Both the position numbers and the translations under genes were made by a program. Below, piece by piece: positions 24,330 through 46,732 of a stretch of DNA of 64,000 nucleotides (within the stretch, counting starts at the first letter, position 1; every line of letters starts with the position of its first letter). The stretch is taken from the NCBI RefSeq assembly GCF_902713615.1, contig NC_052164.1, positions 105,600,989 through 105,664,988 on the forward strand, read 5' to 3'. The notes under the pieces are model-generated. The model did not search any database and was not told the DNA's origin. It saw only the letters and a list, made by a program, of their open reading frames with translations. Source of the DNA: Scyliorhinus canicula. Its lineage: Eukaryota.

Positions 24330-24730
24330 CTGCTGCAGTTCACCCTCCGGCCGGGTGGTGGCGGCCGCGGGGAAGGAAACTCCCGGTGGCTCAGCCGGTT
24401 GCTCAGGCGGGGCGGCGGCAGCGGGAGGCCGGGGAGCGGGAGGCCGGGGAGCGGGGAGCCTGAGGCCGGGGAGCGGCAGCGGGAGGCCGGGGAGCGGCAG
24501 CGGGAGGCCCGAGGCCGGGGAGCGGGGAGCGGGAGGCCTGAGGCCGGGGAGCGGGAGGCCCGAGGCCGGGGAGCGGGAGGCCCGAGGCCGGGGAGCGGGG
24601 AGCGGGAGGCCTGAGGCCGGGGTGATGGCCGGGGTCGGGGTTTGCCAGTCGGTTTTCCCGGATTTGGGCGCCGAGGATTCGGGTCCGACTCTGATCGAGA
24701 GTCTGTGCATGAACTGCCTGGAAAATGTGA
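24330..24730 (+). promoter_or_regulatory. ZPR1 CpG-island promoter/5' UTR with GC-rich tandem repeat (ggggagcgggaggccYgaggcc)
   Basis: CpG-dense region ending at the ZPR1 ATG. Confidence 0.75.
24625..24726 (+). CDS. ZPR1: ZPR1 exon 1 (MAGVGV...[11 protein letters not shown])
   Basis: gtgATGG start; donor gtgagg. Confidence 0.88.
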
Positions 24731-27700
24731 GGAGAGAGGGGATATGGGGTTGGGGGGGTGTTGGAGTGGGGGGGTGTGGGGGGTGGGGGGGGTGTGTAGG
24801 GGGTGGGGGGGTGTGTAGGGGGTGGGGGGGTGTGTGGGGGGGGTATGGGTGCGGTGTGGGTGTGGGGGTGGAGGGGGGGTGAGGGGGGTGGGTGGGTGAG
24901 GGGGGTGTGTGGATGAGGGGGGTGGGGGGTGGGGGTGGGTGAGGGGGGTGGGTGGGGGTGAGGGGGTTGTGTGGGGGTGAGTGGGTGAGGGGGGTGTGGG
25001 TGGGTGAGGGGGGTGTGGGTGGGTGAGGGGGGTGTGTGGGTGAGGGGGGTGTGGGTGAGGGGGGGTGTGGGGGAGGGGGTGGGAATGGGCCAAGGGGAGA
25101 TGTGGGGAGATGTGGGAAGCTGGGAGGGGAGGGAGGAGATTGTGGGGGGAGTTGCTTCAAAATCAAAGTTCCACAACTGCCATTGGTGCTCAGAGCTGGG
25201 GAGCTGAGAATGTAGCCGTGGGGCCACCCGGGGCTGCGCCACACGGGGCTGTGGGCCACACGGGGCTGTGAGCCACACGGGGCTGTGGGCCACACGGTGG
25301 GCCCACATGCGGCTGTGAGCCAGACCATGGGATGTCCTGTTCTCCAAATGTGCTTTTTGCAATCTGCACATGTCGGCAGCACGCCAGTGATTTAAATAAA
25401 TGCCAGAAAATCTCAGCGGGTCTGGCAGCGACTGTGGAGAGAGAGAAACAGTTAACTATCTTCGAGCTGATCAATTGATTGGATACGATCAGTGATGGTG
25501 ACTTCACCAATTCCTCTCGACATTCCAGGCTCTGAGCAGTAATGTGACAGATCTTTTCATCTGTTTTATTGAATGGATGATGATGATCACATCAATATTT
25601 CTTTCTGTTTTTGTTCCTTTCCAAAGGGGATGACTCGGTTGCTGTTAACTAAAATTCCATTCTTCAAAGAAATTATTGTGAGTTCTTTTGCCTGTGAGAA
25701 CTGTGGATGGGTTAACAATGAGATCCAGTCAGCAGGGAAGATTCAGGAGCAGGGCGTGCAGTATAAACTGCGTGTTTCTTCCAAAGAGGTGAGTTAGTGC
25801 CTGTACTTGGTGCTCTTATCAGAAATTGAAATATTTGTTTCTGACTCAGTGAAATTACTTTTCTCATTCTATTCAGTGTGACGCATGGGTTTTGGCCGAT
25901 ACTCTAGAGTTTAGAAGAATGAACGGTCAATTTGCTGAAACATGTAAGAGTCTCAGGGGCTTTGACAGGGTAGATTTTGAGAGGCTGTTACCCCTCATGG
26001 GGGAATCTAGAACTAAGGGACACAGTTTCAGAATAAGGGATCTCCCATTTAAAACAGAAATGAGGAGGAATCTTTGAGATGGTGAGTCTGGAATTTTCCT
26101 CGGCAGAGGGCAGTGGAACCTGGGTCATTGGCGGCTCAGCAAGACATGTATTTTTAAAAAATAATTTTTATTCTAATTTTCACATATTCACAAAAAAGAA
26201 AACAATAACAGAAAATTCTAAGAACAAAAAAAAACAGAACCCCCCCCCGCTGTAAATACAAAAGAGAAACAATAAATTAACGCCCGTCGTTGGCAAAAAA
26301 CAGATATTCAACCCAAAACAAAAACAGAGAGAGACCCCCCCACCCCGGGTTGCTGCTGCTGCTGACCTTTTGTTTTTACCGTTCTGCCAGGAGATCTAGG
26401 AATGGTTGCCATCTCCTGAAAAACCCCTGAACTGACCCCCTTAGGGCAAATTTCACCCTCTCCAATTTAATAAACCCCGCCATATCGTTGACCCAGGCCT
26501 CCACGCTTTGGGGCCTCGCATCCTTCCACTGAAGAAGAATCCTCCGCCGGGCTACTAGGGACGCAAAGGCCAGAACACCGGCCTCTTTCGCCTCCTGTGC
26601 TCCCGGCTCCACTGCAATCCCAAATATTGCGAGTCCCCAGCGTGGATTGACCCTGGATCCTACCACCCTCGATACCGTCCTTGCTACACCCTTCCAAAAT
26701 TCCCCCAGCGCTGGGCATGCCCAGAACATGTGGACATGGTTTGCTGGGCCCACAGAGCACCTAATACACCTGTCCTTGGTCCCAAAAATACGGCTCATCC
26801 TTATCCCGGTCATATGAGCCCTATGCAGCACCTTGAACTGTATGAGGCTAAGCCTCGCACAAGAAGAGGAGTTCACCCTTTCTAGGGCATCCGCCCACGT
26901 CCCCTCCTCAATCTCCTCACCCAGCTCCTCCTCCCATTTATCTTTCAGCTCCTCCTCCGAGGCCTCGTCTACCTCCTGCATCACCTGGTACACTTCCGAG
27001 ATCCTCCCCTCTCCAACCCATACCCCCGAGAGCACCCTGTCCTGGACCCCACGCAGCGGCAGCAGGGGGAATCCCGCCACCTGCCGCCTGACAAACGCCC
27101 TTACTTGCATGTACCTAAAGGTGTTCCCCGGGGGGAGCCTGAACTTCCCTTCCAGCTCACCCAGGCTCGCAAACTTCCCGTCTATGAACAGGTCCCCCAG
27201 CCTCCCAACACCTGCCCTGTGCCAACTCAGGAACCCGCCATCAATTCTCCCTGGAACAAACCGGTGGTTCCCCCGTATCGGGGACCCCATCGAGGCCCCC
27301 ACCTCCCCCCTGTGCCGCCTCCATTGCCCCCAAATGTTGAGGGTAGCTGCCACCACCGGGCTCGTGGTATACCTCGTCGGAGGGAGCGGCAGCGGTGCCG
27401 TTGCAAGCGCTTCCAGGCTCGAGCCCACACAGGATGCCATCTCCAGCCTCTTCCATGCTGCCCCCTCCCCGTCCATTACCCACTTACGCACCATCGCTGC
27501 GTTGGCAGCCCAATAGTACCCACAAAGGATGGGCAACGCTAGCCCCCCCCCCCCATCATCCCGGCCCCGCTCCAAGAACACCCGTCTCACCCTTGGAGTC
27601 CCATGTGCCCACACAAACCCCGTAATGCTCCTGTTAACCCGCCTGAAAAAGGCCTTCAGGATAAGGATGGGGAGGCACTGGAACAGGAACAGAAACCTCG

Positions 27701-30700
27701 GGACTGCACCCTACCCGCCAAAGACAGGACAGCATGTCCCACCTCTTAAACTCCTCCTCCATTTGCTCCACCAGCCTTGTGAGATTTAGCTTATGCAAGG
27801 CCCCCCAGCTCCTGGTCACCTGAACCCCCAAGTACCTGAAGCTCCTCTCCGCCCTTTTCAGTGGGAGCCTCCCAATCCCCCCCTCCTGCTCCCCCGGGTG
27901 TACCACAAACAGCTCGCTTTTCCCAAAGTTAAGCTTATACCCTGGGAAATCCCCAAATTCCCAGAGAATCCCCATCACCACCGGCATTCCCCCCACCGGG
28001 TCCGCCACATACAACAATAGGTCATCCGCATAGAGCGACACTCGGTGCTCCTCCCCACTCCGGACCAGCCCCCTCCAATCCCCCAACTCCCTCAGGGCCA
28101 TAGCCAGGGGTTCAATTGCCAGCGCAAAAAGTAGGGGGGACAGGGGACACCCCTGCCTTGTCCCTCGGTATAGTCGAAAATACTCCGACCTCCTCTTATT
28201 CGTGGCCACACTCGCTCAGCTAGACATGTTTGATGGACAAGGGAGTGGGCGTTTATGGGAGGTGGGGTTTGTGGGAGGCAGGGGTTTATGGGAGGCAGGG
28301 GTTTATGGGAGGCGGAGTTTATGGGAGGCAGGAGTTTATGGGAGGCAGGGGTTTATGGGAGGCGGGGTTTATGGGAGGCAGGGGTTTATGGGAGGCGGGG
28401 TTTATGGGAGGCAGGGGTTTATGGGAGGCGGGGTTTATGGGAGTCGCGCAGGAAAGTGGATTTACGACCACAATCGGATCAGCCATGATCTTATCGAATG
28501 ACGGGACAGTCATGATGGACGGAATATTCCACTCATATTTCTTATTCCTCCCCTCCATACTGGAGTGCACATGAATATTGAGAGAGATTTACGGTGATAT
28601 GGTTGGATGTTTCAGCTGTGCCACTGTTGAAATTGATGTTTGTTGTCTAAACTGAGGTATGGCCATTTGATGACAGTTCTGGTGCTGTGAAATCAGTGTA
28701 CCACAACAGTACCATGTGACAGCACACATGTGAAATCAGTGTACCACAGAACGTTACCATGTGAGCACACATGTGAAGTCAGTGTCACACATTACCATGT
28801 GAGAGCACACATGTGAAATCAGTATAACACAACATTACCATGTGACAGCACACATGTGAAATCAGTATACCACAGAACGTTACCATGTGAGAGCACAACT
28901 AGTTGTCTTGATTTTGATGAACTGTGTTCTTTATTTTCAAAATAATTCTGTCAAGCTGTTTAAATTGAATACTGACCTGTACTAGTGGATCTCTTTTTAA
29001 TCGGCCTTCTTGGCACAGTGAATCTTTAATTCTGCTTGACACGATGAATCTATCAGTCTGTGTGTAATCGTGGTGAATCTATCGGTCTGTGTTTAAACGC
29101 GGTGAATCCATTGGTGTGTGTTTAATCTTGCCTGACACGGTGAATCCATCGGTCTGTGATTAATGCGGTGAATCTATCGGTCTGTGATTAATGCGGTGAA
29201 GCTATCGGTCTGTGTTTAATTGCCGTGAATCCATTGGTCTGTGTTTAATCTCGGTGAATCCATTGTACAGGATCTGAACCGTGAAGTGGTGAAAGCTGAC
29301 TGTGCGACAACCAAAATCCCTGAACTTGACTTTGAGATTCCACCGTTCACACAGAAAGGGGGTAAGTAGCTGCTCACTGATTCACACAGAAAGGGGGGTA
29401 TGTAGCTGCTCACTGATTCACACAGAAAGGGGGTAAGTAGCTGCTCACTGATTCACACAGAAAGGGGGGTATGTAGCTGCTCACTGATTCACACAGAAAG
29501 GGGGTAAGTAGCTGCTCACTGATTCACACAGAAAGGGGGTATGTAGCTGCCCACTGAGTCACACAGAAAGGGGGGTAAGTAGCTGCTCACTGATTCACTG
29601 TTTGTACCACTGGACCAGCAGATTCTGGTGCAAAATTCTTATCTGGGTTCCTGAGAAGGGTTCCCGAGAAGGGTGACCAGAATAATATCCTACCGTGGGG
29701 CACTTTAAAGACACATAAGTTGAGAGAAATATAACGGAGGTGTTCAGAATCAGTAGAGATAGGTTATATGGAAATGGGAAAGGTTGGATTTTCATAAAAA
29801 TCCTTGCAGTCATCACTCTCTGCTCACGAAAGAGAATAAATAAGTTCATGATTAAAGAGAGATTTCCAGTTGAGAAAGAGTTATTTACATGTGAAAAGAG
29901 TGGGCAAAGAATGTTCTGAAGCTTTGCTCAATTGTCTTACGAGGTGAGGGGTTTCCTGTGTTTACAGCCACTGTGGTTAATGGGTGGATTTGGCACTGCA
30001 GGTGGTTGCACTATCTTCACAAGGATGCCTTTAATGATCCCATCTGTTCACATCTCTGTGTTTGTAGCCCCTGTTGTAGCACAGTGACAGTTGCCTGTGT
30101 TGGCTCTGTTGTAGCACAGTGACAGTTGCCTGTGTTGGCTCTGTTGTAGCACAGTGACAGTTGCCTGTGTTGGCTCTGTTGTAGCACAGTGACAGTTGCC
30201 TGTGTTGGCTCTGTTGTAGCAAAGTGACAGTTGCCTGTGTTGGCTCTGTTGTAGCACAGTGACATTTGCCTGTGTTGGCTCTGTTGTAGCACAGTGACAG
30301 TTGCCTGTGTTGGCTCTGTTGTAGCACAGTGACAGTTGCCTGTGTTGGCTCTGTTGTAGCACAGTGACAGTTGCCTGTGTTGGCTCTGTTGTAGCACAGT
30401 GACAGTTGCCTGTGTTGGCTCTGTTGTAGCACAGTGACAGTTGCCTGTGTTGGCTCTGTTGTAGCACAGTGACAGTTGCCTGTGTTGGCTCTGTTGTAGC
30501 ACAGTGACAGTTGCCTGTGTTGGCTCTGTTGTAGCACAGTGACAGTTGCCTGTGTTGGCTCTGTTGTCGCACAGTGACATTTGCCTGTGTTGGCTCTGTT
30601 GTAGCACAGTGACAGTTGCCTGTGTTGGCTCTGTTGTAGCACAGTGACAGTTGCCTGTGCTGGCTCTGTTGTAGCAAAGTGACAGTTGCCTGTGTTGGCT

Positions 30701-33700
30701 CTGTTGTAGCACAGTGACAGTTGCCTGTGCTGACTCTGCTGGCTGTCGTTACTATTCACCGTTGATCAGAATACCACAGGTTAGGGCTGCACGGTGGCCT
30801 AGTGGTTAGCACAGCTGCCTCACGGCGCTGAGGTCCCAGGTTCGATCCCGGATCTGGGTCACTGTCTGTGTGGAGTTTGCACATTCTCCCCGTGTCTGCG
30901 TGGGTTTCGCCCCCTCAACCCAAAAATGTGCAGAGTAGGTGGATTGGCCACGCTAAATTGCCCCTTAATTGGAAAAAATAATTGGGTAAACTTAAAAAAA
31001 AAAGAATACCACAGGTTAGGGTGCTTCTCTGTAAACAGTTACAGCTGCAGAGAGTAAAGCAGAGATATGACAGTTATAAAGATTTGACCTGTTACTGTGA
31101 TAGCCCTGAAAACAATTAAACCATCTTTACCATGGGCAGCACGGTAGCATTGTGGATAGCACAATCGCTTCACAGCTCCAGGGTCCCAGGTTCGATTCCG
31201 GCTTGGGTCACTGTCTGTGGGGAGTCTGCACATCCTCCCCGTGTGTGCGTGGGTTTCCTCCGGGTGCTCCGGTTTCCTCCCACAGTCCAAAGATGTGCAA
31301 GTTAGGTGGATTGGACATGATAAATTGCCCTTAGTGTCCAAAATTTCCCTCAGTGTTGGGTGGGGTTACTGGGTTATGGGGATAGGGTGGAGGTGTTAAC
31401 CTTGGGTAGGGTGCTCTTTCCAGGAGCCGGTGCAGACTCGATGGGCCGAATGGCCTCCTTCTGCACTGTAAATTCTATGATCTATGATCTCATCTGTTCT
31501 AATACACAGAATCCTTAGGGTGCAGAAGCAGGCCGTTTGGCCCATTGAGTCTGCATGCCTCTTTATTCTACCTAGTCCCACGCCCAGTCTTATCTCATAA
31601 CCTTACACATTCTCTCTTTTCAGATAACAATCCAATTCCCTTTGAATACTTTGATCAAGCCTGCCTCCAACACCCTCTCAGGAAATTCCTCCCAGACTTC
31701 AAAACTTTTCCTCCTTTTGTTCAATATTTTGAATCTGTTCCCTCTAGTTCTTGATGTTCTCTTGCGAGGGAGCAGTTTCTCATTATTTACCCTGTCCATA
31801 CCCCTCAGAATCGTGAATACCTCTCGCAAATCTCCTCTCCGCCTTCTTTTCTCCAAGAAAAACAGACTCAATCTCTCCAATCCATCCTCATAGGTACAGT
31901 TCTTTATTCCTGGAATAAATATTGTGAATCTCCTCTGTACTCTCTCTAGTGTCTCCACATCCTTCCTCAAGTATGGTGCCCAGAACTGGATACAGTCTCC
32001 AGACGAGGCCCAGCTAGTGTTTTATCCAAGTTCAACATGGCTGCCTTACATTTGTAGTCAATACTGTATAAATAAAACCTAGGATATGATATGATTTATC
32101 AACTGTTCTCAACCTGTCCTGTCATCTGCAATGACTTGTGTACATGTACACTGTGAAGGAGTGTTAATTATTTTTCTATGGATTATATGCATGTATGTTG
32201 CTACTGGTGTATTCACTTGGACCTAAATGCCAGACTGTGAAGTATCTGATCATAGAGCTTCTTTGAATAGATATTGTTTGCCGGTAGTGATGGACTGGTA
32301 CTAATGACTGTATTGGAGCATATTTGCCTGCTGCTTTTAGCAGTTTTGACGAGTTTGGCTCTCCTCTGATCTGTTCCTATTTTTGCAGCACTGTCTACTC
32401 TTGAGGGTCTGATTGACAGAGCTGTTGCTGGTCTAGAGCAGGATCAGCCCACACGAAAGGTAGGTGGTCAGCACTGGTCACTGGTTTGCTGAGAATGTGA
32501 AACAAAGTCCAGTATTGAATGTTTGCTTCACCCCCGACTCCTTTCCCAGAATATCCCCAATGTTCAAGCATCAAGGTATAAGTCCAGGATTCAAGACTAG
32601 GAGAGACGAACATAAACACTGTGAAACTGGGATTAGGAGCTGTCAAACTTGCTTTTTTAATAAAAGAAACTGCATATAAGGTAGAGTTCCAGAGCTTGAA
32701 CTCCTGGTCGTGTGTCGGGTACCCACAAAGCCCTGAGCACGTAATTTCCTGCACTGGCAGATGGCGGCAAAACAGTGTCTAGAATTTGGTATATCGAAGC
32801 AAAGATGAACTAGATTATTCAGTAAGAAGTCTTACAACACCAGGTTAAAGTCCAACAGGTTTGTTTCAAACACTAGCTTTCGGAGCACTGCTCCTTCCTC
32901 AGGTGAATGGCGAGGTACCTCGCCATTCACCTGAGGAAGGAGCAGTGCTCCGAAAGCTAGTGTTTGAAACAAACCTGTTGGACTTTAACCTGGTGTTGTA
33001 AGACTTCTTACTGTGCTCACCCGAGTCCAACGCCGGCATCTCCACATCATAGATTATTCAGAGAATGGCTTGGCATAGCTAGTGCTTATAAAGAGTGAGG
33101 CTGATTGCTAGATGAGGCCATTGCCTTTCACATAATGGTTGTTCAGTCTGTGCGGGGCTGATATGTGGGGTTCCACCCCCACATTGGGAGCAGTGATCCA
33201 GCAGTGAGTTGGGCCTGATCTGTATTTTTTAATATGTATCATTAATGTGGCCTAAAGAAAATCTTTATTTCTTGGTCCTGCTACCCATCCCAGGCAACTG
33301 ATCCTGATGTGGCCTCCAAGATTGAGGAATTTATTGAAAAGCTAACCAAGCTGAAGGATGTAGAGATGCCGTTCACACTGGTAATTTCTGTCTGGGGTGA
33401 TGTATTACTGCGATACTCCTGTCGGTGAGAATTCATTGCGCGGGGGAAGCTGTTTACCTATGTGCACTGAACTGTTCCTCTACCAATCCTGAAACATTGT
33501 ACATGTATATTAGAGGCAATGATGCCCAAATATTCAGAGGCTGATGAAATGGAATGTGCATTAAATAAGTTGGAGCACCAGAGGAAGCTTTTAGTGAATA
33601 TTGATAGACTGGCCAAGAGTTCGCAGAATTCATGGAGTGTCAATAAGAGTAAGGCTTTAAAACAAAAAAAATTATGTTCTGGGGAAAGCTGTGTGCAGAA

Positions 33701-36700
33701 AAGCAGCAGAATTAAATGTTCTTGCACTGTTAGCATATCTGGCAGGCCTGCATTGCCCTTGCGAAGGTGGGGGAAGCCACCATGAGCCACTTCAGCCCAT
33801 GTGGTGCAGGTACTCCCTGCCCTCAGTGTTTTATTGGTTTCTGGGGCCACCTGAAGGCCAGGCCAGGTAAGGGCAGCAGATTTCCTTTCGGAAAGCCCAA
33901 CGGTGAATCAGATGGGTTTTTCTGGCAATCTGGTAGGATTATTATTAATAAGACTGATGTTTTATTCCAGATTAATTAACACAGTTGAGTTTAAATTCCC
34001 CCGGCTGCTGGAAGTGGCACCTCTATCTGGAATGTTAGTCCGGGCCTTTGGGTTACTTGTCCAAATTGCAAAGCCCCTGGGTAATCCGGTTTACAAAACA
34101 TTAACAAGATAACACAATAAAATAAATGACTAGAACCCTACATTCTGCAGCGAGACTGAGAATATAAAAATTTATATAACTGTATGTCTGTAAAATTAAT
34201 GACTGACCACAGCTCCACATAGCAGTTACAGGCTTCACAATATAGCAACAATGCTGTTTAGAGTTGCTACAGCAAAGAATTACTAACATGGCTATGAGGA
34301 AACATAAATGCAACAAAAGACTGGGGGCGGCACGGTGGTTAGCACTGCTGCCTCACAGCTCCAGGAACCCGGGTTCAATTCTGGCCTCAGGTGAATGTGC
34401 AGACTCCACACAGGCATTCTCCCCATGTCTGCGTGGGTGGGTTTCCTCCGGGTGCTCCGGTTTCCTCCCTCGGTCCAAAGATGTGCAGGTTGGTGGATTA
34501 AGCACGATCAATGTACCACCACCATTGCACAGTAGGGTAGCACAGTGGCTAACACTGTTGCTTCACAGCTCCAGGGTCCCAGGTTCGATTCCTGGCTTGG
34601 GTCACTGTTTATGTGGAGTCTGCATGTTCTCCCCGTGTCTGCGTGGGTTTCCTCCGGGTGCTCTGGTTTCCTCTCACAAAGATGTGCAGGTTCGGTGGAT
34701 TGGCCATGCTAAATTGCCCTTAGTGTCCAAAAAGGTTGGGTGGGGTTGTGGGGATGGGGAGAAGGTGTGGACTTGAGTGGGGTGCCTTTTTCATGGGCTG
34801 GTGCAGACTCGATGGATCGGGTGGGCTCCTCCTGCACTATAAATTCTATGATAAAGTAGCAGCCGTGTGTACCATCTACAAGATGCACTGCAGCAACTCA
34901 CCCAGGCTCCTTGGGCAGCTCCTTCCAAACACACCACCACTACCCTCTAGAAGGTTACGGGCAGCAGATACCTGGGAACTCCACCACTTGGAGGCGCCCC
35001 TCCAAGTCTCTCACCACCCTGACTTGGAAAGATATCCTTCACTGTCGCTAGGTCATAATCCTAGAATCCCTTCCCTAACAGCAATGTGGGTGTACCTACA
35101 TCTCGGGGACTGCAGCGGTTCAAGAAGGCAACTCATCACCACCTTCTAATGGGCAACAAATGCTGGCCTAGCCAGTGAAGCCCTCCTACCATATCTTAAT
35201 TTTTAAAAACCCTTGACTTGTTTTCACGTTCAGTTAATCGGGTATCCTTGTGCAGGTTGTGGATGATCCATCTGGGAACAGCTTTGTCGAGAATCCCCAT
35301 GCCCCACAGAAGGATGAGGCGTTAACGATTACTCATTACAAGCGAGATGCTGCACAGGACAGCATGTTGGGGCTGCAGGTAGGTGTGTATATGTGGTGGG
35401 TATGTGTGTTGGCTGAGTTATTAGGATCTGATAAGTCACCACTTTTTGAAATAGTGGCTTTTCAACCTTTGTTTGGGAGAATGTTTAACAAATGTTCCCG
35501 TATAACAGGAAGAGAAATTTCATGGCCATTTATGAAGAATTTACACAGAAACAGGTCACTAGGCCCAGCCCATCTGGTATTGACGATCAAAATGAGCTGC
35601 CTTCATACTGTTTATTTAGCTTCCTGTTAAATGCTTCACTGTTATTCATCTCAACTACTCCCTGTGGTAGTGAGTTGCACACTCACACCGCACAGATAAT
35701 AATGTAGAACTTATTACCACAGGTATAATTGAAGCTTGAAATCCCCAAAGTTAATTAATGAGTTTGTAAGTTATTTGTAGATGTTTCCGAGCTAATCTTG
35801 CTTCCCCTAAATGTTGTTTAAATCCAGTCGAACCCCTACAAAATCGCCGAGAGTCTAACCCCTACAAAATAGTGTGGTGCTGTATGTTGCTGTGATCGTG
35901 AATGATTGAATCTTCTGTGCACCAATGATTTTATTTTGTCCGATATCCTTACAGGCATCTACAGAAGAGGAGAAATCCCAAAACACCAGTGACGATTTCA
36001 GGAATGAAGTGAGTGTTCCCATGAGGACTGTAAACCATAACTGATATTGAGGAAGTATTAGTAAAGCTGACTATATAAAGTTGATATGTCTCCAAGACCT
36101 GATGAATACATTCAAGAATACTGAGGGAAGTAAGGGTGGAAATGGCAGAGGCACTGGCTGCAGTCCTGGAATCATCCTCAGATAGTTTGGGGGGGGGGGG
36201 GGGGGGGGGCGTGGTTTCCTGGACATCAGGTGTTCATGTCCTGGTACATGTAAGATTGAGGGGGGCTGTGTGTTTCATGTATATCATTTCTATATTTCAA
36301 AAGCTCATATTTCAGGGGCTGGTTTAGCTCACCGGGCTAAATCGCTGTCTTTTAAAGCAGACCAAGCAGGCCAGCAGCACGGTTCGATTCCCGTACCAGC
36401 CTCCCCGGACAGGCGCTGGAATATGGCGACTAGGGGCTTTTCACAATAACTTCATTGAAGCCTACTCGTGACAATAAGCGATTTTCATTTCTTGACATTC
36501 AGAGTAGACTTTCCTTAGAAGTGGGTTAGGAGTAGCTGGGTGATTTTAAACTCTGCATCCAGTAGCCAGACTTGACCAGCAGATATCTGACCCTAAAACG
36601 ATCGGTTATAATCTTAACAGAAGAGGAAATCTGTGTTACTAAATGATGTGTTTCCATCTCTATAGGTGTTGCAGTTTGGTACCAACTGTCCAGGGTGTAA

Positions 36701-39700
36701 TGCACCTGCGGAGACCAACATGAAGTTAGTGCGTATCCTTTGACCGAGGGTGCAATAGCTGGGGCCTTAACAGACATCTTTGCAGCATCCTTGAGCACGG
36801 GTGAGGTCCCGGAGGACTGGAGAATTGCTAATGTTGTCCCTTTGTTTAAGAAGGGTAGCAGGGATAATCCAGGGAATTATAGACCTGTGAGCTTAACGTC
36901 AGTGGTAGGCAAACTGTTGGAGAAGATACTGAGGGATAGGATCTATTCACATCTGGAAGAAAATAGACTTATCAGTGATGGGCAGCATGGTTTTGTGCAG
37001 GGAAGGTCATGTCTTACAAACCTAATAGAATTCTTTGAGGAAGTGACAAAGTTAATTGATGAGGGAAGGGTTGTAGATGTCATATACATGGACTTTAGTA
37101 AGGCGTTTGATAAGGTTTCCCATGGCAGGTTGATGGAAAAAGTGAAGTCGTATGGGGTTCAGGGTGTACTAGCTAGATGGATAAAGAACTGGCTGGGCAA
37201 CAGGAGACAGTAGTGGTGGAAGGGAGTGTCTCAAAATGGAGAAGGGTGACTAGTGGTGTTCCACAGGGATCCGTGCTCGGACCACTGCTGTTTGTGATCT
37301 ACATAAATGACCTGGAGGAAGGTATAGGTGGTCTGATTAGCAAGTTTGCAGATGATACTAAGATTGGTGGAGTTGCAGATAGTGAGGAGGACTGTCAGAG
37401 AATGCAATAAAATATAGATAGATTGGAGAGTTGGGCAGAGAGAAATGGCAGATGGAGTTCAATCCAGGCAGATGTGAGGTGATGCATTTTGGAAGATCAA
37501 ATTCAAGAGCGAACTATATGGTCAATGGAAGGGTCTTGGGGAAAATTGATGTACAGAGAGATCTGGTACAGAGAGATCTGGGAGTTCAGGTCCATTGTAC
37601 CCTGAAGGTGGCAACGCAGGTGAGAGAGGTCAAGAAGGCATACAGCATGCTTGCCTTCATCGGACGGGGTATTGAGTACAAGAGTTGGCAGGTCATGTTA
37701 CAGTTGTAACTTTGGTTAGGCCACATTTGGAATACTGCGTGCAGTTCTGGTCGCCACATTACCAGAAAGATGTGGATGCTTTAGAGAGTGTGCAGAGGAG
37801 GTTCACCAGGATGTTGCCTGGTATGGAGAGTGCTAGCTATGAAGAAAGGTTGAGTAGATTAGGATTGTTTTCGTTGGAAAGACGGAGGTTGAGGGGGGAC
37901 CTGATTGAGGTCTACAAAATGGAGAGGTATGGACAGGGTGGATAGCAACAAGCTATTCCCAAGAGTGGGGGTGTCAGTTACAAGGGGTCACGATTTCAAG
38001 GTGAGAGGGGGAAAGTTTAAGGGAGATGTGCGTGGAAAGTTTTTTACGCAGAGGGTGGTGGGTGCCTGGAATGCTTTACCAGCGGAGGTGGTAGAGGCGG
38101 GCACGATAGCATCATTTAAGAGGCATCTACACAGGTATATGAACAGGCGGGAACAGAGGGAAGTAGACCTTGGAAAATAGGCGACAGGTTTAGATAAAGG
38201 ATCTGGATCGGCGCAGGCTGGGAGGGCCGAAGGGCCTGTTCCTGTGCTGTAATTTTCTTTGTTCTTTGAGCACATTAGACACAATGGAATAGTAGTAGGG
38301 AGGGAAACGGCTGCACTTGAATTAAAACATCCAGCGTGTTTGACCAAGATCAAAAATGTCAATTTGAAAAATGTTCTTTATTTCAGGTAGAAATTCAGTG
38401 GCAATAAAGAAGCAGCTTCTGTTAGACTAAAGGTTAAACCGTGGAAATCTCTAGAGTTCGCGAGCTGCTAGGGTGTGGTTTGGGTCTAGGTAGGGTGCTC
38501 TTTTGGAGGCTTGGTGCAGACGTTGATGGGCCAAATGGCCTCCTGCACTGTAGGGATTCTATGATTTTCCCTCACCCACTGAATGCACTCCATGTGGGTG
38601 CCAGCCCTCGCTCCAGGACCATTTCTCAGGCGAGTCTGGACAGTGATTGACAACAGGCTGTTTCATGTGAATTCCATCTATCAAGTGGAGCTTGATGTTT
38701 TCCACACAAGCAGTTTGTTGTAGAAGGCAGACTCGCTGACTCTGTCTCTCCTGCACAGAGTTTTTTTAAATGTACTTTATTCAAAATACATGTAAAAACA
38801 GCAACATTTAAATACACATCCCTTACAATCACAGGCCAGTTTTCTCCCTTTATCTCCCCCCCCCCCCCCCCCCCCCCGCGACGAACAATTCCTCAAACAT
38901 GAACCACCCACACCGTATCTCGAAGCCCTCCGCTGACCCCTTCAACCCAAAATTAATCTTCTCCAACCAGAGAAAGTTGCACAAATCCCCCAGCCAGGTT
39001 GCCACCCCTAGCAGTGTATCCGACCCCCAATTGAACAGGATCCTTCGGGCAATTAGAGCGATTAAGGCCACAACATTGGCTTCCTTCCCCTCCAGAAGCT
39101 CCGGCCTTTCTGATACCCCAAAAGTCACCTCCATTGGGTCCGACCTGAGCTGCACACCCACTAGCATAGTTTGTGTCCCAAACACCACTTCCCAGTATTT
39201 CTTCAGCCCACACTTCTCGCACCCATCAGCCACCTCCTGAAAGAACTAACTCATCATCGCCCGGGTCAAATGTACCCTGTGCACCACCTTGAACTGAATC
39301 AAGCTCATCCTCACGCAGGAGGTGGTTGAGTTCACCCTCTGCATCGCCTCGTCTATTTCCCCACCCCAAATCCTCCCCCCATTTGTTCTTGATCCTCACC
39401 AAACCTCTACAATAGTCCCTTGATCCTGCCCATACTCTCCAGCGGGTCCAACACAAACAACAACAGGTCGTCCGCATAATGACACCCAGTGCTCCCTGCT
39501 CCCCCTCGCCATTCAAAAAGGAATGAGAGTGTTAATCTGAAAAGGAAGAATGTGCAGGGCTATGGGGCGAATGGCACTAGATGAGCTGCTCATTCAGAGA
39601 GTCAGGGCAGACCCGATTGGCCAAAAGGCCTCCCCGTGCCATAACAATCCTGTGATTATTTTCAGAAGTTAGTCCTTTTTTTTTTTTTTTTTTGTTTTCA

Positions 39701-42700
39701 AAATTTATCCCTGATAATGGGTCTTGCTGGGCAGCACGGTGGCCTAGTGGTTAGCACAACCGCCCCACGGCGCTGAGGTCCCAGGTTCGATCCCGGCTCT
39801 GGGTCACTGTCCGTGTGGAGTTTGCACATTCTCCCCGTGTCTGCGTGGGTTTCGCCCCCACAACCCAAAAATGTGCAGAGTAGGTGGATTGGCCACACTA
39901 AATTGCCCCTTAATTGGAAAAAATAATTGGGTAATCTAAAATTAAAAAAAAAAGATAATGGGTCTTGTAGCAATCATTTGTAATAACCATAACAACACTC
40001 ACTGTCCATTTAGCAGCCGCACTACTCTGGGGTTTTAATGGGTTCCAGCTTGAAGCTGTGCCCGTGTTTTCCTTTATCAAAGGTGGCCAGAAATCCCACA
40101 CTTTAAGGAGGTGATCATTATGGCAACTAACTGTGAAGCCTGTGGACAGAGGACCAATGAGGTAAATATTACTGACTTTCTAAATTATAACGGGGAGAGG
40201 GATTGTGGGAAGAAGATTAAACTATTGACTGTGGTATTGTGAACATTTATTGTGCTCCTCCAATTCCTTTTTTGTCTTGTGAAGGAATTGGCTCCTTGTT
40301 AGATCATTCTGCACCATTAACATCCACTCCACTCCCAAAAGGATACTCTGATGAGCTAGTTCATGGCCTCTGCCAATGTTGTTCTGGACTGATATCTGGA
40401 ATGAGATTAGCCTGGCTAATGCTTCCCCTACCACTTATGCTGACTCTACAAAGGCATGCCCGAGAGTGCCGGTAACCGTGTGGGGAGTATCAGGGTTTTA
40501 TGTTCATTGCACCTGTGTTTATGATGCAGGGGGAAGAACTGAGTTGTTTCCCTTCCTCCCTCACACTAGACCGTGAGCTGTTCTGGTGTTGCTCTTGCAA
40601 AAGGGAAATTCTAGTTGCAGCTGTGTAACTTATCAAAGTCAGTGAGCAGCTGGCTTTGTACAGAAATGGTGCAGCAATTCTAGATTGGCACCTGAGCAAG
40701 AGCTCTGAACAAAGGCAGGAGTTTGTTTCTTCAGGCCAGAGAGATCCTGGACACCACTGAATTAAATCCCCTCACTCGTGGCAAAGGTATAACAGTTGAC
40801 TCTTTTGCCCTTGATTTAAAGACTCGAAAATGGGACTAACTTTATAGAACATAGAACAGTACAGCACAGAACAGGCCCTTCGGCCCTCGATGTTGTGCCG
40901 AGCCATGATCACCCTACTCAAACCCACGTATTCACCCTATACCCCCAACAACCCCCCCCCCCCCCCCCCCGTAACCTTTTTAGGACACTACGGGCAATTT
41001 AGCATGGCCAATCCACCTAACCCGCACATCTTTGGACTGTGGGAGGAAACCGGAGCACCCGGAGGAAACTCCTGTTCACTATTTAGTGACTCATGTTGCA
41101 AAGCCTGAGGAGAAAAAGAGAGTGCATTTATATAGTATCTTTCACAACCATCAGTGCTTTGCCAGTGAAATATTTTTATGCTGTAATGTTCTAATAAGCT
41201 GTTGTCGGGCTGTGATCACCCTTGTGACTGAATATTTTGCAATTCACCTTGTCCCAACTCCCACATGAAGAGGTGCAAGAGGCTGTGACACCTTACTGAA
41301 GTGGGGAATCTGAATCTTTAGAGGGGGAGGATAGCAGAGGTTCTGTTTGGCAAAAAGAGCAGACAGAATTATATAAACATTGCTTGTTCATTCATAGTTA
41401 TTTTACAATTTTAGGTGAAGTCAGGAGGAGCCACTGAGCGTCTGGGAACCAAAATCACACTGCGAATTACTGACCCGTCTGACATGAGCAGGGACTTGCT
41501 CAAGGTACAACATTGTTCCATCACCGTGGTTTGGAGCCGCAAGCTTCTCATGTGTCCTGTTCAATTGCTGCATCTGAGAAAGGAACCTGATCAGTAATTG
41601 GTTACATTTATAACGATAATTAAATCTTTACAAAGGCATAATATTTATCGACTGTGGTTTGTGGTATTCAATGGTTGTGAACAATAATTCTGTCCTTTTT
41701 TGTCCCTTGTAGTCAGAAACCTGTGCCGTCTTTATTCCAGAGCTGGAGTTTGAGCTCGGAATGGGAATACTCGGAGGAAAGTTCACTACCTTGGAAGGGT
41801 TACTGAATGATGTGAAAGAATTAGTGAGAAATGATTTATTTTCTAAATCTTAGTCATTTGTTCTGGGAACATGCAAGGTGTTGGTGCAACTACCTTGGGA
41901 CTCTGGAAGGATTCGAGCTGCTCCTCCCTCCCTGGGAGCAGGACTTAGCTGAATTCCTCTATTTGTTTTAAAAAAAAATTATGTTTGGCATTAGAGGTAA
42001 AGGTGAAGGATTCTCCATGAGGAGGAAGCTGTTGATCCACTTTGTCAAGAAGCACTAAATCGTCAGTGGGAGGAGGGGGAAGGTTGGGGGGGCGGGAGAT
42101 TGAGGGATATATTTGTTTTTTATATTTTGGGGGGGAAGGGTGGGTTGAAGGATATTTTGGTTTAGACAAACTCTGGGGGGAGATTGGCGGTTTTCTATAT
42201 ATGGTGGGTTTACCAGGTTATATTATTCCAATATTATATGTTACTGCTTCACGGCTTGTTATAGTTCTCTGATATATTATCTTTTAAAAATATGTATTTT
42301 TTTTCCCCTTGATTTAATAGACTGTGGCAAAGAACCCATTTTTTGCTGGGGACAGCACCGTTCCTGAAAGATCCAAGAAACTTGGAGAATTTGGGCAGAA
42401 GTTGAACGAGGTAAGAAAGTTCTTAGCTCCTGAATTTTATATTTGATAAATTGGGGTATTCCCCAGGTACTGTTGCAGTTCACCATGTGAGTGAATCCAG
42501 GTGGCATTGAGCAGTGACTGAAAGCTGAGCCAGATTCAAAACCAGGGAATCCTTAAAAATGAACCTGAGGATGACACCGTGCATCCACTGTAGTGACCTC
42601 CAGCTTGCATCTTTCCCCATGGCTGAACTTTATGTAAGTGCTGTTCAGATTCTCGCCATTTCTAATGTTTGTCGGACTTTATATTCCCCTAAACAGCAAT

Positions 42701-45700: not shown

Positions 45701-46732
45701 ACTGCAATGAAGTTACTGTGAAAAGCCTCTAGTCGCCACACTCCGGCGCCTGTTCGGGTACACGGAGGGAGAATTCAGAATGTCCAAATTACCTAACAGC
45801 ACGTCTTTCGGGGCTTGTGGGAGGAAACCGGAGCACCCGGAGGAAACCCACGCAGACACGGGGAGAACGTGCAGACTCCACACCGGCAGTGACCCAAGCC
45901 TAGAATCGAACCTGGGACCCTGGCTGTGTGAAGCAACAGTGCTAATCAATGTGCTACCGTGCCGCCCGTGAAATAGCTTCACCCTGTCTAAACACAGTGG
46001 GTTCCAGCCAAGAGTGGAAGAAGAAATCTGCCTGCGCTGCTGGCTATGTGCAGAAAGAGCTACTTCAGACGGTGCCGATGAGCTCTAAGAGGGGCTGCTA
46101 TTCAATCCCCTGCATCTCCCAGCTCGGAACACCCCTAAGGACTCTGCTTCCACTCAGATTATCCATTTACCCGAGTTCAATTACTCCCAGAAGAAAATGC
46201 TTTTAGCCGGATGCAGCTGTCATTTAGTCAGGTTGAGTGATGGCTGGCTGCCTCTGTCCTGCTTGTGTCTCTGATGGAGGGTTCACTCTCCTTCATCCAG
46301 AATTAATATTGAGTGACCGGTCAGTGCAATCAGCTTATTGAGACCAATTATTGTCATCGTAACCCTACATGTTTTTGGGCATTTTGTCTCCTTCTTCAGT
46401 GGGTAACCACATCAAGGAATGGAGATTCCACAGATCTTTTATCGTCACAACTTGAACTGGCTTTAATCTGGCCGATGTTGTAAAGACAGAAGAAGCAGGG
46501 TGGAGAAGCCTGGAGTCTGGGAAAGAGTTTCATGTTTAATTATTATTATGGGGATTCCGTTCCTAACATATTTCCTTGTTTCTTCTCTCTGTCAATGTAG
46601 AATTTATATGCCCCGGATCCTGATCCAGAAATGACGGTTGAAAAATTCGAGCGCACATTTGAAGATAATGAGGAACTTGGTTTGAACGACATGAACACTG
46701 AAGATTATCAAGAGCAGAAAGTGGATAAATAA
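24625..46732 (+). CDS. ZPR1: Zinc finger protein ZPR1, 14 coding exons, 1317 nt / 438 aa (gene span)
   Basis: Manual splicing gives one open frame with two C4 zinc fingers (CMNC..CENC; CPGC..CEAC) and A/B domains; exon phases are consistent throughout. Confidence 0.97.
24745..25135 (+). repeat. G-rich (GGGGGT-like) low-complexity tract in ZPR1 intron 1
   Basis: Dozens of G3-G8 runs. Confidence 0.9.
25627..25788 (+). CDS. ZPR1: ZPR1 exon 2 ([15 protein letters not shown]...SSKE)
   Basis: AG/GT, 162 nt. Confidence 0.97.
26150..28213 (-). mobile_element. 5'-truncated L1-clade LINE nested in an old CR1 tail
   Basis: [15 protein letters not shown]-terminal Cys domain; 16-bp TSD gctcagcWagacatgt (26134-26149, 28214-28229). 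Confidence 0.95.
28252..28441. repeat. 16-17-bp minisatellite (gggtttatgggaggcRg)
   Basis: About 11 copies inside the CR1 tail remnant. Confidence 0.92.
28688..28897. repeat. ~42-bp minisatellite, ~5 copies
   Basis: gtgaaatcagtgtaccacagaacgttaccatgtgacagcacacat variants. Confidence 0.9.
29040..29265. repeat. ~28-bp degenerate minisatellite forming the ZPR1 exon 3 acceptor region
   Basis: ggtgaatccattggtctgtgtttaat.. about 8 copies. Confidence 0.88.
29271..29361 (+). CDS. ZPR1: ZPR1 exon 3 ([10 protein letters not shown]...FTQKG)
   Basis: AG/GT, 91 nt. Confidence 0.97.
29346..29598 (+). repeat. 7 x 35/36-bp tandem repeat of the exon 3 end plus splice donor
   Basis: ttcacacagaaagggg(g)gtaWgtagctgctcactga. 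Confidence 0.97.
30070..30740. repeat. 35-bp minisatellite, ~19 near-identical copies
   Basis: ctgttgtagcacagtgacagttgcctgtgttggct. Confidence 0.97.
30784..31002 (+). mobile_element. Poly(A)-tailed V-SINE with TSD of at least 16 bp
   Basis: agaataccacaggtta at 30768-30783 and 31003-31018. Confidence 0.93.
31134..31487 (+). mobile_element. HE1/V-SINE with CR1 tail
   Basis: Complete head, core and tail. Confidence 0.92.
31510..32150 (-). mobile_element. CR1 3' fragment
   Basis: [15 protein letters not shown]...RRRGDL. Confidence 0.85.
32389..32459 (+). CDS. ZPR1: ZPR1 exon 4 ([24 protein letters not shown])
   Basis: AG/GT, 71 nt. Confidence 0.97.
32823..33049. mobile_element. Palindromic, probably Penelope-derived non-autonomous insertion
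   Basis: Perfect palindrome 32820-33013; 12-bp TSD tagattattcag (32811-32822, 33050-33061). Confidence 0.85.
32928..32962 (+). ncRNA. Minimal type I hammerhead ribozyme motif (mirror copy on minus strand at 32871-32905)
   Basis: cac-CUGAGGA-a-ggagc(agu)gcucc-GAAA-gc-UA-gug: core boxes, stem II, palindromic AGCU stem III, 3-bp stem I. Confidence 0.7.
33294..33380 (+). CDS. ZPR1: ZPR1 exon 5 ([14 protein letters not shown]...PFTL)
   Basis: AG/GT, 87 nt. Confidence 0.96.
34323..35180 (+). mobile_element. Two tandem V-SINEs followed by a LINE 3' remnant
   Basis: SINE heads at ~34323 and ~34533; remainder matches 54460-54790. Confidence 0.8.
35256..35378 (+). CDS. ZPR1: ZPR1 exon 6 ([14 protein letters not shown]...MLGLQ)
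   Basis: AG/GT, 123 nt. Confidence 0.97.
35955..36008 (+). CDS. ZPR1: ZPR1 exon 7 ([18 protein letters not shown] linker)
   Basis: AG/GT, 54 nt, ends in conserved RNE. Confidence 0.88.
36315..36491 (+). mobile_element. Second SINE family copy
   Basis: Matches 12206-12383. Confidence 0.8.
36666..36732 (+). CDS. ZPR1: ZPR1 exon 8 ([22 protein letters not shown])
   Basis: 67 nt, followed by U12 donor GTATCCTTT. Confidence 0.97.
36744..38263 (+). mobile_element. 5'-truncated CR1 LINE with RT domain
   Basis: [36 protein letters not shown]; (TTCTTTG) tail; CTTTGA TSD. Confidence 0.95.
38760..39420 (-). mobile_element. L1-clade 3' fragment
   Basis: Same C-terminal motifs as 18185-19010, with A tail. 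Confidence 0.8.
39729..39953 (+). mobile_element. Poly(A)-tailed V-SINE with 14-bp TSD
   Basis: gataatgggtcttg at 39713-39726 and 39954-39967. Confidence 0.93.
40091..40161 (+). CDS. ZPR1: ZPR1 exon 9 ([24 protein letters not shown])
   Basis: 71 nt, phase 1 start. Confidence 0.97.
41415..41504 (+). CDS. ZPR1: ZPR1 exon 10 (VKSGGATE...SRDLLK)
   Basis: AG/GT, 90 nt. Confidence 0.97.
41713..41823 (+). CDS. ZPR1: ZPR1 exon 11 ([14 protein letters not shown]...[16 protein letters not shown])
   Basis: AG/GT, 111 nt. Confidence 0.97.
42321..42410 (+). CDS. ZPR1: ZPR1 exon 12 ([12 protein letters not shown]...QKLNE)
   Basis: AG/GT, 90 nt. Confidence 0.94.
43200..44830 (-). mobile_element. Rearranged L1-clade fragments (endonuclease, ORF1, C-terminal piece)
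   Basis: VSVYAPN..LGGDFNC (EN); [16 protein letters not shown] (ORF1). Confidence 0.8.
45585..45650 (+). CDS. ZPR1: ZPR1 exon 13 ([22 protein letters not shown]), GC donor
   Basis: 66 nt; CAG|GCAAGT. Confidence 0.93.
45669..45968 (-). mobile_element. V-SINE with third tail type
   Basis: V core plus ...gcctacttgtgacaat..gattatt tail; TGAAATA TSD (45662-45668, 45969-45975). Confidence 0.88.
46601..46732 (+). CDS. ZPR1: ZPR1 exon 14 ([11 protein letters not shown]...[17 protein letters not shown])
   Basis: Acceptor and TAA at 46730-46732. Confidence 0.97.

What the first reader, a model, noticed from the sequence alone, without database searches (positions are those of the whole stretch)
29346..29598. 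Seven tandem copies of the ZPR1 exon 3 splice donor; only the first keeps the frame open
Seen: the last 16 nt of exon 3 plus the donor are repeated, giving GT sites at 29362, 29398, 29433, 29469, 29504, 29539 and 29575. They alternate GTAAGT/GTATGT in near-identical context. Reading past donor 1 hits an in-frame TAG (29367-29369), so any downstream donor should give a premature stop and NMD. Each unit also has cacAG 7-8 nt before its GT, allowing possible micro-exon or stepwise splicing. Inference: either a strong unexplained preference for the first donor, or a copy-number-tunable dosage control on an essential gene.
Basis: partly seen in the sequence, partly recalled or inferred. Interest (0 to 1): 0.75.

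Follow-up and report, generated by a model that had tools for sequence, protein, structure and literature searches.

The report
Splice-donor minisatellite behind ZPR1 exon 3
The end of ZPR1 exon 3 plus its splice donor has been copied seven times in tandem into the intron of this shark gene, a kind of exon-boundary minisatellite already known from human F7, IFI6 and CBS, and most likely a tolerated repeat rather than a dosage control.

Summary
A 35/36-bp minisatellite (29346-29598, 7.1 copies) starts 16 nt before the end of ZPR1 exon 3. It repeats the 5' splice site at 29362, 29398, 29433, 29469, 29504, 29539 and 29575. Only the first GT keeps the frame; every later one reads into the TAG at 29367-69.

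This is a known kind of structure. Human F7 intron 7 carries a 37-bp VNTR whose first unit spans the exon/intron border, and only the most upstream donor is used (PMC1557585). That paper lists IFI6 (6-16), CBS, LMNB2 and PDGF as further cases.

This scan has already found the same thing on other DNA of this genome: PDCD11, an MHC class I gene, GEMIN5 and ARL16. Those follow-up notes report first-donor use only. I did not check them.

Minisatellites cover 10% of this window, so one crossing an exon border is not surprising.

I could not test donor use. No shark ZPR1 protein or orthologous locus could be reached. First-donor use therefore rests on orthology of the exon 3/4 junction and on precedent. 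The dosage-control idea is untested and has no support here.

Verdict: new member of a known kind, low to moderate interest.

The parts
29271..29361 (+). ZPR1 exon 3 (30 codons plus 1 base, phase 1 at its 3' end)
   Evidence: Pfam jr-ZPR1 positions 2-31, E = 3e-9. tblastn places pheasant ZPR1 (P0049) residues 139-169 here at 77% identity. Acceptor AG at 29269-70.
29346..29598 (+). 35/36-bp minisatellite, 7.1 copies, built as a 71-bp dimer repeated about 3.5 times; the first unit is 16 nt of exon plus 19 nt of intron
   Evidence: Tandem Repeats Finder scores 444 (period 35) and 476 (period 71, 97% matches). Unit table.
29362..29369 (+). Donor 1 (GGG|GTAAGTAG), the only donor that keeps the frame; taken to be the authentic 5' splice site
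   Evidence: Joining 29361 to 32389 gives the residue order seen in orthologues: P0049 169 to 171 with one split codon. U1 duplex -11.9 kcal/mol.
29367..29369 (+). In-frame TAG reached by any transcript that reads past donor 1
29398..29405 (+). Pseudo-donor 2 (GTATGTAG)
   Evidence: U1 duplex -8.1 kcal/mol.
29433..29440 (+). Pseudo-donor 3 (GTAAGTAG, identical to donor 1)
29469..29476 (+). Pseudo-donor 4 (GTATGTAG)
29504..29511 (+). Pseudo-donor 5 (GTAAGTAG)
29539..29546 (+). Pseudo-donor 6 (GTATGTAG; this unit carries two further substitutions)
29575..29582 (+). Pseudo-donor 7 (GTAAGTAG)
29594..29598 (+). Terminal TTCAC, repeating the TTCAC that opens the array at 29346-29350; this 5-nt microhomology brackets the ancestral single unit
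   Evidence: Read directly from the sequence. That it seeded the first duplication by slippage is inference.
32389..32459 (+). ZPR1 exon 4, the acceptor partner of the donor(s)
   Evidence: Sequence. tblastn places P0049 residues 171-193 here at 74% identity.

Best explanation
This is an exon-boundary minisatellite. A 35-nt segment made of the last 16 nt of ZPR1 exon 3 and the first 19 nt of intron 3, bracketed by a 5-nt TTCAC microhomology, was duplicated by slippage. The two copies then diverged by an A-to-T change in the donor and one extra G. The resulting 71-bp dimer was amplified to about 3.5 copies. The array begins inside the exon and runs downstream, so the coding sequence and the first donor stay intact, and the six extra donors lie in the intron. 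The spliceosome most likely uses the first donor nearly always, as it does for the identical pseudo-sites of human F7 intron 7. Likely reasons are 5'-to-3' selection or exon definition from the exon 3 acceptor, possibly helped by the G5-6 runs that lie in the intron once donor 1 is chosen. On this reading the array is a tolerated by-product of a genome rich in minisatellites. Any rare use of a later donor would produce a transcript with a stop at codon 33 of the extended exon, which should be removed by nonsense-mediated decay. Shown: the anatomy, the frame logic, donor strengths and gene identity. Inferred: which donor is used, the order of duplication events, and neutrality.
For: The array and all seven GT sites are confirmed. 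The gene is ZPR1, with 14 coding exons mapped. Only donor 1 reproduces the orthologous exon 3/4 junction; all others hit the TAG at 29367-69. Units 1, 3 and 5 are identical, units 2 and 4 are identical, and the 71-bp period gives 97% matches, which points to recent dimer amplification. No pseudo-donor pairs with U1 better than donor 1: -11.9 kcal/mol for copies 1, 3, 5 and 7, and -8.1 for copies 2, 4 and 6. In F7, only pseudo-sites that match the consensus perfectly competed with the upstream site (PMC1557585). Precedents are F7, IFI6 (6-16), CBS, LMNB2 and PDGF. The RNA has no special fold that could mask sites (z = +1.74). Minisatellites cover 10.4% of the window and 9.1% of the ZPR1 span. 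Their closeness to exon edges is not beyond chance (p = 0.05-0.085). Other notes of this scan report the same structure at four other genes of this genome, with first-donor use only (unchecked AI notes, leads only).
Against: [quoted passage not shown] That rule would favour donor 7 here. In IFI6 and CBS the first two pseudo-sites are also used, so some leakage to donors 2-3 cannot be excluded. Neutrality is assumed, not shown: no population or cross-species data were available.
Confidence: 0.75

Rival explanations
1. Leaky decoy donors and a dosage effect. A measurable share of transcripts use pseudo-donors, most likely 2 and 3 as in IFI6 and CBS, or 7 under the intron-proximal rule. These transcripts acquire the TAG and are degraded, so ZPR1 output falls as copy number rises.
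For: Pseudo-donors 3, 5 and 7 are identical to donor 1, and all seven lie in the U1-pairing range of real ZPR1 donors. IFI6 and CBS use two pseudo-sites, and the title of a paper cited there (Lievers 2001) links the CBS VNTR with reduced activity. In vitro, strong duplicated sites splice from the downstream copy. All extended exons (127-304 nt) are within normal exon size.
Against: In living cells, F7 shows no use of identical pseudo-sites. Other boundary arrays of this same genome are reported to use only the first donor (unchecked). ZPR1 is an essential gene (own knowledge), so a large loss of output would be selected against. No expression or copy-number data exist here.
Confidence: 0.13
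2. Functional U1 landing pad. The six extra strong U1 binding sites just inside intron 3 help define the short exon 3, whose acceptor region lies inside another minisatellite and has a poor pyrimidine tract, or they protect the long intron from premature cleavage. On this reading the array is kept by selection without being spliced at.
For: The exon 3 acceptor has only 60% pyrimidines in the 20 nt upstream, against 75% for exon 4. A 5' splice site downstream of an exon recruits U2AF and U2 to the upstream 3' splice site (PMC8724738). G runs inside introns can reinforce exon-intron borders (PMC1802585, citing McCullough and Berget 1997).
Against: This is pure inference. A single strong donor already provides the function. 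The near-identity of units points to a recent expansion rather than long-term retention. No conservation data are available.
Confidence: 0.06
3. Assembly artefact. The array, or its copy number, is wrong in the assembly.
For: Tandem repeats are a classic source of assembly error, and no reads could be laid here.
Against: The array is only 253 bp long. It carries unit-specific variants (G5 or G6 runs, A or T in the donor, two substitutions in unit 6, G for T at the start of unit 7) in an orderly dimer pattern. Similar arrays are common across the window.
Confidence: 0.04

Closest known systems
Human F7 intron 7 37-bp VNTR (Borensztajn et al. 2006, PMC1557585)
   Same: Unit size is nearly the same (37 vs 35-36 bp) and so is copy number (5-9 vs 7). 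In both, the first unit spans the exon/intron border, so the authentic donor is followed by identical pseudo-donors that compete for one acceptor.
   Different: F7 units hold 4 exon bases and a weak donor (UGG/gugggu). Here the unit holds 16 exon bases and a strong donor, alternating with a one-mismatch variant in a dimer pattern. In F7 some pseudo-sites would keep the frame; here none can, because of a TAG 5 nt into the intron. Donor use is shown for F7 but not here.
Human IFI6 (6-16) exon 2 minisatellite and CBS 31-bp VNTR at exon 13/intron 13
   Same: Both are minisatellites that reiterate the splice donor at an exon border. The CBS unit is 24 exon nt plus 7 intron nt, in 16-21 copies.
   Different: In both human genes the first two pseudo-sites are also spliced. 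For ZPR1 this is unknown, and any such product would carry a stop.
Human LMNB2 (100 bp, 10-15 copies) and PDGF intron 4 (81 bp, 16-18 copies) junction repeats
   Same: The exon/intron junction is reiterated, and only the authentic donor is used.
   Different: Their units are much longer, so the pseudo-donors are spaced further apart.
Boundary minisatellites noted by this scan in the same genome (PDCD11, MHC class I, GEMIN5, ARL16)
   Same: The architecture is the same, exon end plus donor copied into the intron, and the genome is the same. Follow-up notes report that only the first donor is used.
   Different: Those arrays have 20-70 copies and this one has 7. ARL16 involves a U12-type donor. 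They are AI notes that I did not verify.

Membership tests
Exon-boundary (5' splice-site-reiterating) minisatellite, F7 IVS7 type | Head-to-tail array with a unit of roughly 10-100 bp | tested here: met
   Period 35 (and 71), 7.1 copies, 93-97% matches.
Exon-boundary (5' splice-site-reiterating) minisatellite, F7 IVS7 type | The first unit spans the exon/intron junction, so the donor sequence recurs in the intron | tested here: met
   The unit starts at 29346 and the exon ends at 29361. GT sits at seven in-register positions.
Exon-boundary (5' splice-site-reiterating) minisatellite, F7 IVS7 type | Pseudo-sites are identical or nearly identical to the authentic donor | tested here: met
   Copies 3, 5 and 7 are identical over -3 to +8. 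Copies 2, 4 and 6 differ at +4 only.
Exon-boundary (5' splice-site-reiterating) minisatellite, F7 IVS7 type | Only (or mainly) the most upstream donor is used in vivo | not testable with these tools
The indirect evidence is that only donor 1 gives the orthologous junction and an open frame.
Exon-boundary (5' splice-site-reiterating) minisatellite, F7 IVS7 type | Copy number varies between individuals (VNTR) | not tested
   No second individual or assembly could be reached.
Regulated unproductive splicing (alternative 5' splice site coupled to nonsense-mediated decay) | Reproducible use of a stop-generating alternative donor, usually conserved between species | not testable with these tools
   The stop-generating geometry is present, but neither usage nor conservation could be examined.
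Recursive splice site | An acceptor AG directly abutting a donor GT (AG|GT) | tested here: not met
   In every unit the CACAG ends 7-8 nt before the GT.

The most novel reading that the evidence does not exclude
At least five genes of this shark genome carry donor-reiterating arrays, one of them on a U12-type donor. This could mean that 5' splice sites themselves seed minisatellites in this lineage, for example through a process coupled to transcription or U1 binding, or through G-run-dependent slippage, rather than being overlapped by chance. Alternatively, the ZPR1 array might leak enough to set ZPR1 dosage according to copy number.
Probability: 0.1. Interest if true: 0.6.

Novelty: new member of a known kind. 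Interest (0 to 1): 0.25.

Why it matters
Arrays of identical strong donors that compete for one acceptor are natural experiments on how the spliceosome picks a 5' splice site. Work in living cells on F7 says the most upstream site wins. In vitro work with strong duplicated sites says the intron-proximal site wins. A non-mammalian vertebrate with many such arrays, this one with very strong GTAAGT donors in an essential gene, could show how general the upstream-first rule is. As a single locus, however, it adds little beyond the human precedents and the other cases already noted in this genome.

Tried and rejected
The stretch holds no N. I did not resend it or trim it, so read laying could not be used.

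2. Protein route to shark transcripts or orthologous loci.
- A word search with the exon 2 open frame found only 47 short proteins. The best was a genomic open frame of a related shark at 91% identity, with no exon junctions.
- The exhaustive representative search gave a pheasant ZPR1, P0049, as the nearest full-length protein.
- A word search with P0049 listed only birds, reptiles and mammals in its best 120.
- A MAFFT alignment of P0049 with the exon pieces was scrambled by the internal duplication of ZPR1 and was unusable as a profile.
- I assessed querying with a hemichordate ZPR1 (P0309) to lift slow-evolving sharks up the list. The shark only ties with birds, so I left the third word search unused.

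3. Exact look-ups of three window open frames near the array found nothing on record.

4. RNA structure masking the later donors is rejected (z = +1.74).

5. Enrichment of arrays at exon edges in this gene is not significant.

6. Eperon 1993 and 2000, Turri 1995 and McCullough and Berget 1997 are not held in the library. They are cited only through papers that are held.

Exons were searched separately by reference.

Full report
**The observation**

The stretch 29346-29598 is a clear tandem array. Tandem Repeats Finder gives period 35 with 7.1 copies, 93% matches and score 444. It also gives period 71 with 3.6 copies, 97% matches and score 476.

Splitting the array in register gives units that start at 29346, 29381, 29417, 29452, 29488, 29523 and 29558:
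- Units 1, 3 and 5 are identical: 35 nt, a run of five G, donor GTAAGT.
- Units 2 and 4 are identical: 36 nt, six G, donor GTATGT.
- Unit 6 is a GTATGT unit with five G and two further substitutions.
- Unit 7 starts with G instead of T and has six G and GTAAGT.

The 24-nt intronic part of the unit occurs seven times in the window and nowhere else, against 0 expected from shuffles.

**The gene**

The + strand carries ZPR1.
- Exon pieces hit Pfam Zn_ribbon_ZPR1 (E = 1.7e-19 and 3.2e-12) and jr-ZPR1 (E = 3e-9 to 1.4e-10).
- tblastn with a pheasant ZPR1 (P0049), found by the representative search, lays 13 exons in order from 24649 to 45650. A further piece at 46601-46684 appeared only as a weak match (E = 3.8) to an internal repeat of P0049, and I take it as the fourteenth exon by eye.
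- Exon 3 is 29271-29361. It has an acceptor AG at 29269-70 and holds 30 codons plus one base.
- Exon 4 starts at 32389 after a good acceptor.
- Joining 29361 to 32389 gives the same residue order as the orthologue: P0049 residues 139-169, one split codon, then 171-193.
- Reading past donor 1 meets the TAG at 29367-69. Every later donor therefore yields a stop at codon 33.

Exons were searched one by one by reference.

**How it arose (inference from the sequence)**

The array opens with TTCAC (29346-50) and is closed by another TTCAC (29594-98) before unique intron sequence resumes. A single ancestral unit bracketed by a 5-nt microhomology is the classic substrate for a first slippage duplication.

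The strict alternation of two unit types, and the better fit at period 71, indicate the order of events. The first two copies diverged, and the dimer was then amplified. The perfect identity of units 1, 3 and 5 and of units 2 and 4 says this was recent, or that the array is being homogenised.

**Can the extra donors work?**

By pairing to the 5' end of U1 (sequence from established knowledge), copies 1, 3, 5 and 7 give -11.9 kcal/mol and copies 2, 4 and 6 give -8.1 kcal/mol. Seven other donor positions of this gene that I scored, some placed only approximately, range from -4.6 to -13.7 kcal/mol. All seven array copies are therefore plausible donors, and none is stronger than the first.

The RNA of exon 3 plus the array folds no better than shuffles (z = +1.74), so masking by structure is unlikely.

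The extended exons would be 127-304 nt, which is not abnormal.

The CACAG in each unit ends 7-8 nt before the GT. Its upstream 20 nt are 55-60% pyrimidine, and the implied micro-exons are 7-8 nt long. Stepwise splicing is thus possible on paper only.

**What is known**

Borensztajn et al. 2006 (PMC1557585) describe the same architecture in human F7. There, a 37-bp VNTR of 5-9 units has a first unit that spans exon 7 and intron 7. Their findings:
- Only the most upstream donor is used.
- The pseudo-sites become active one by one when the upstream ones are destroyed.
- Only pseudo-sites raised to a perfect consensus compete.
- The behaviour does not depend on cell type.

They list further cases. 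In IFI6 (6-16), with 25 pseudo-sites, the first two are also used. In CBS intron 13, two pseudo-sites are used. In LMNB2 and PDGF only the authentic donor is used. The CBS unit is 24 exon plus 7 intron bases in 16-21 copies.

A contrary rule comes from in vitro work. [quoted passage not shown] Applied here, that rule would predict donor 7, which would destroy the message. ZPR1 is an essential gene (own knowledge) and only donor 1 gives the conserved protein, so the upstream-first rule is the likelier one at this locus. This is inference.

**Context in this genome**

Minisatellites with period 10 or more cover 10.4% of the window and 9.1% of the ZPR1 span. Exon 3 is flanked on both sides by arrays.

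Four of the eight arrays in or beside the gene lie within 20 nt of a coding-exon edge. A placement test gives p = 0.05-0.085, which is not significant.

This scan has already noted the same structure on other DNA of this genome: PDCD11, an MHC class I gene, GEMIN5 and ARL16. The ARL16 note calls the animal a catshark. The follow-ups report that only the first donor is joined. These are unchecked AI notes and I use them only as leads. The human precedents they name I checked in PMC1557585.

**What could not be done**

The stretch has no N. I neither repeated nor trimmed it, so there are no junction reads and no read-level check of the array.
- The protein databases gave no shark ZPR1. An outgroup-query trick looked unpromising, so I left the last word search unused.
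- Exact look-ups of nearby open frames found nothing.
- Donor usage, copy-number variation and conservation therefore remain untested.

**Verdict**

The best reading, at about 0.75, is a tolerated exon-boundary minisatellite of the F7 type, with the first donor used nearly exclusively. A leaky or dosage role (about 0.13), a U1 landing-pad role (about 0.06) and an assembly error (about 0.04) remain open. It is a new member of a known kind and of low to moderate interest. Its main value is as one more natural test case for 5' splice-site choice in a non-mammalian vertebrate.

Noticed in passing
window 29025-29263: A 29-bp minisatellite (about 7 copies) ends 7 nt before the exon 3 acceptor. The branch point and pyrimidine tract of intron 2 therefore lie inside a repeat, and the 91-nt exon 3 sits between two arrays. 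The acceptor itself is not duplicated.
   Followed up: partly
window 30071-30738: An unrelated 35-bp unit is repeated 19 times at 97% identity in intron 3. It has the same unit length as the donor array but a different sequence.
   Followed up: no
window 24420-24619 and 24745-25106: A GC-rich 22-bp array ends 6 nt before the ZPR1 start codon (24625). A G-rich 17-19-bp array on the coding strand starts 19 nt after the exon 1 donor (24727), and could form G-quadruplexes.
   Followed up: no
window 36666-36737 and 40093-40161: The exon encoding the start of the second zinc ribbon is followed by a long intron. That intron holds a reverse-transcriptase-like open frame (about 36701-38177). Another note of this scan (s1-236562) treats this as a CR1 insertion at a U12-type donor.
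   Followed up: no
whole window: Minisatellites with period 10 or more and TRF score 100 or more cover 10.4% of the 64 kb, in 18 merged arrays. They are concentrated in the 5' part of ZPR1.
   Followed up: yes
P0001 (Logan contig, 1838 nt): A genomic open frame from another run matches the window's exon 2 open frame (74-aa query) at 91% identity over 77% of the query. It is probably a related shark. The contig is too short to reach exon 3.
   Followed up: no
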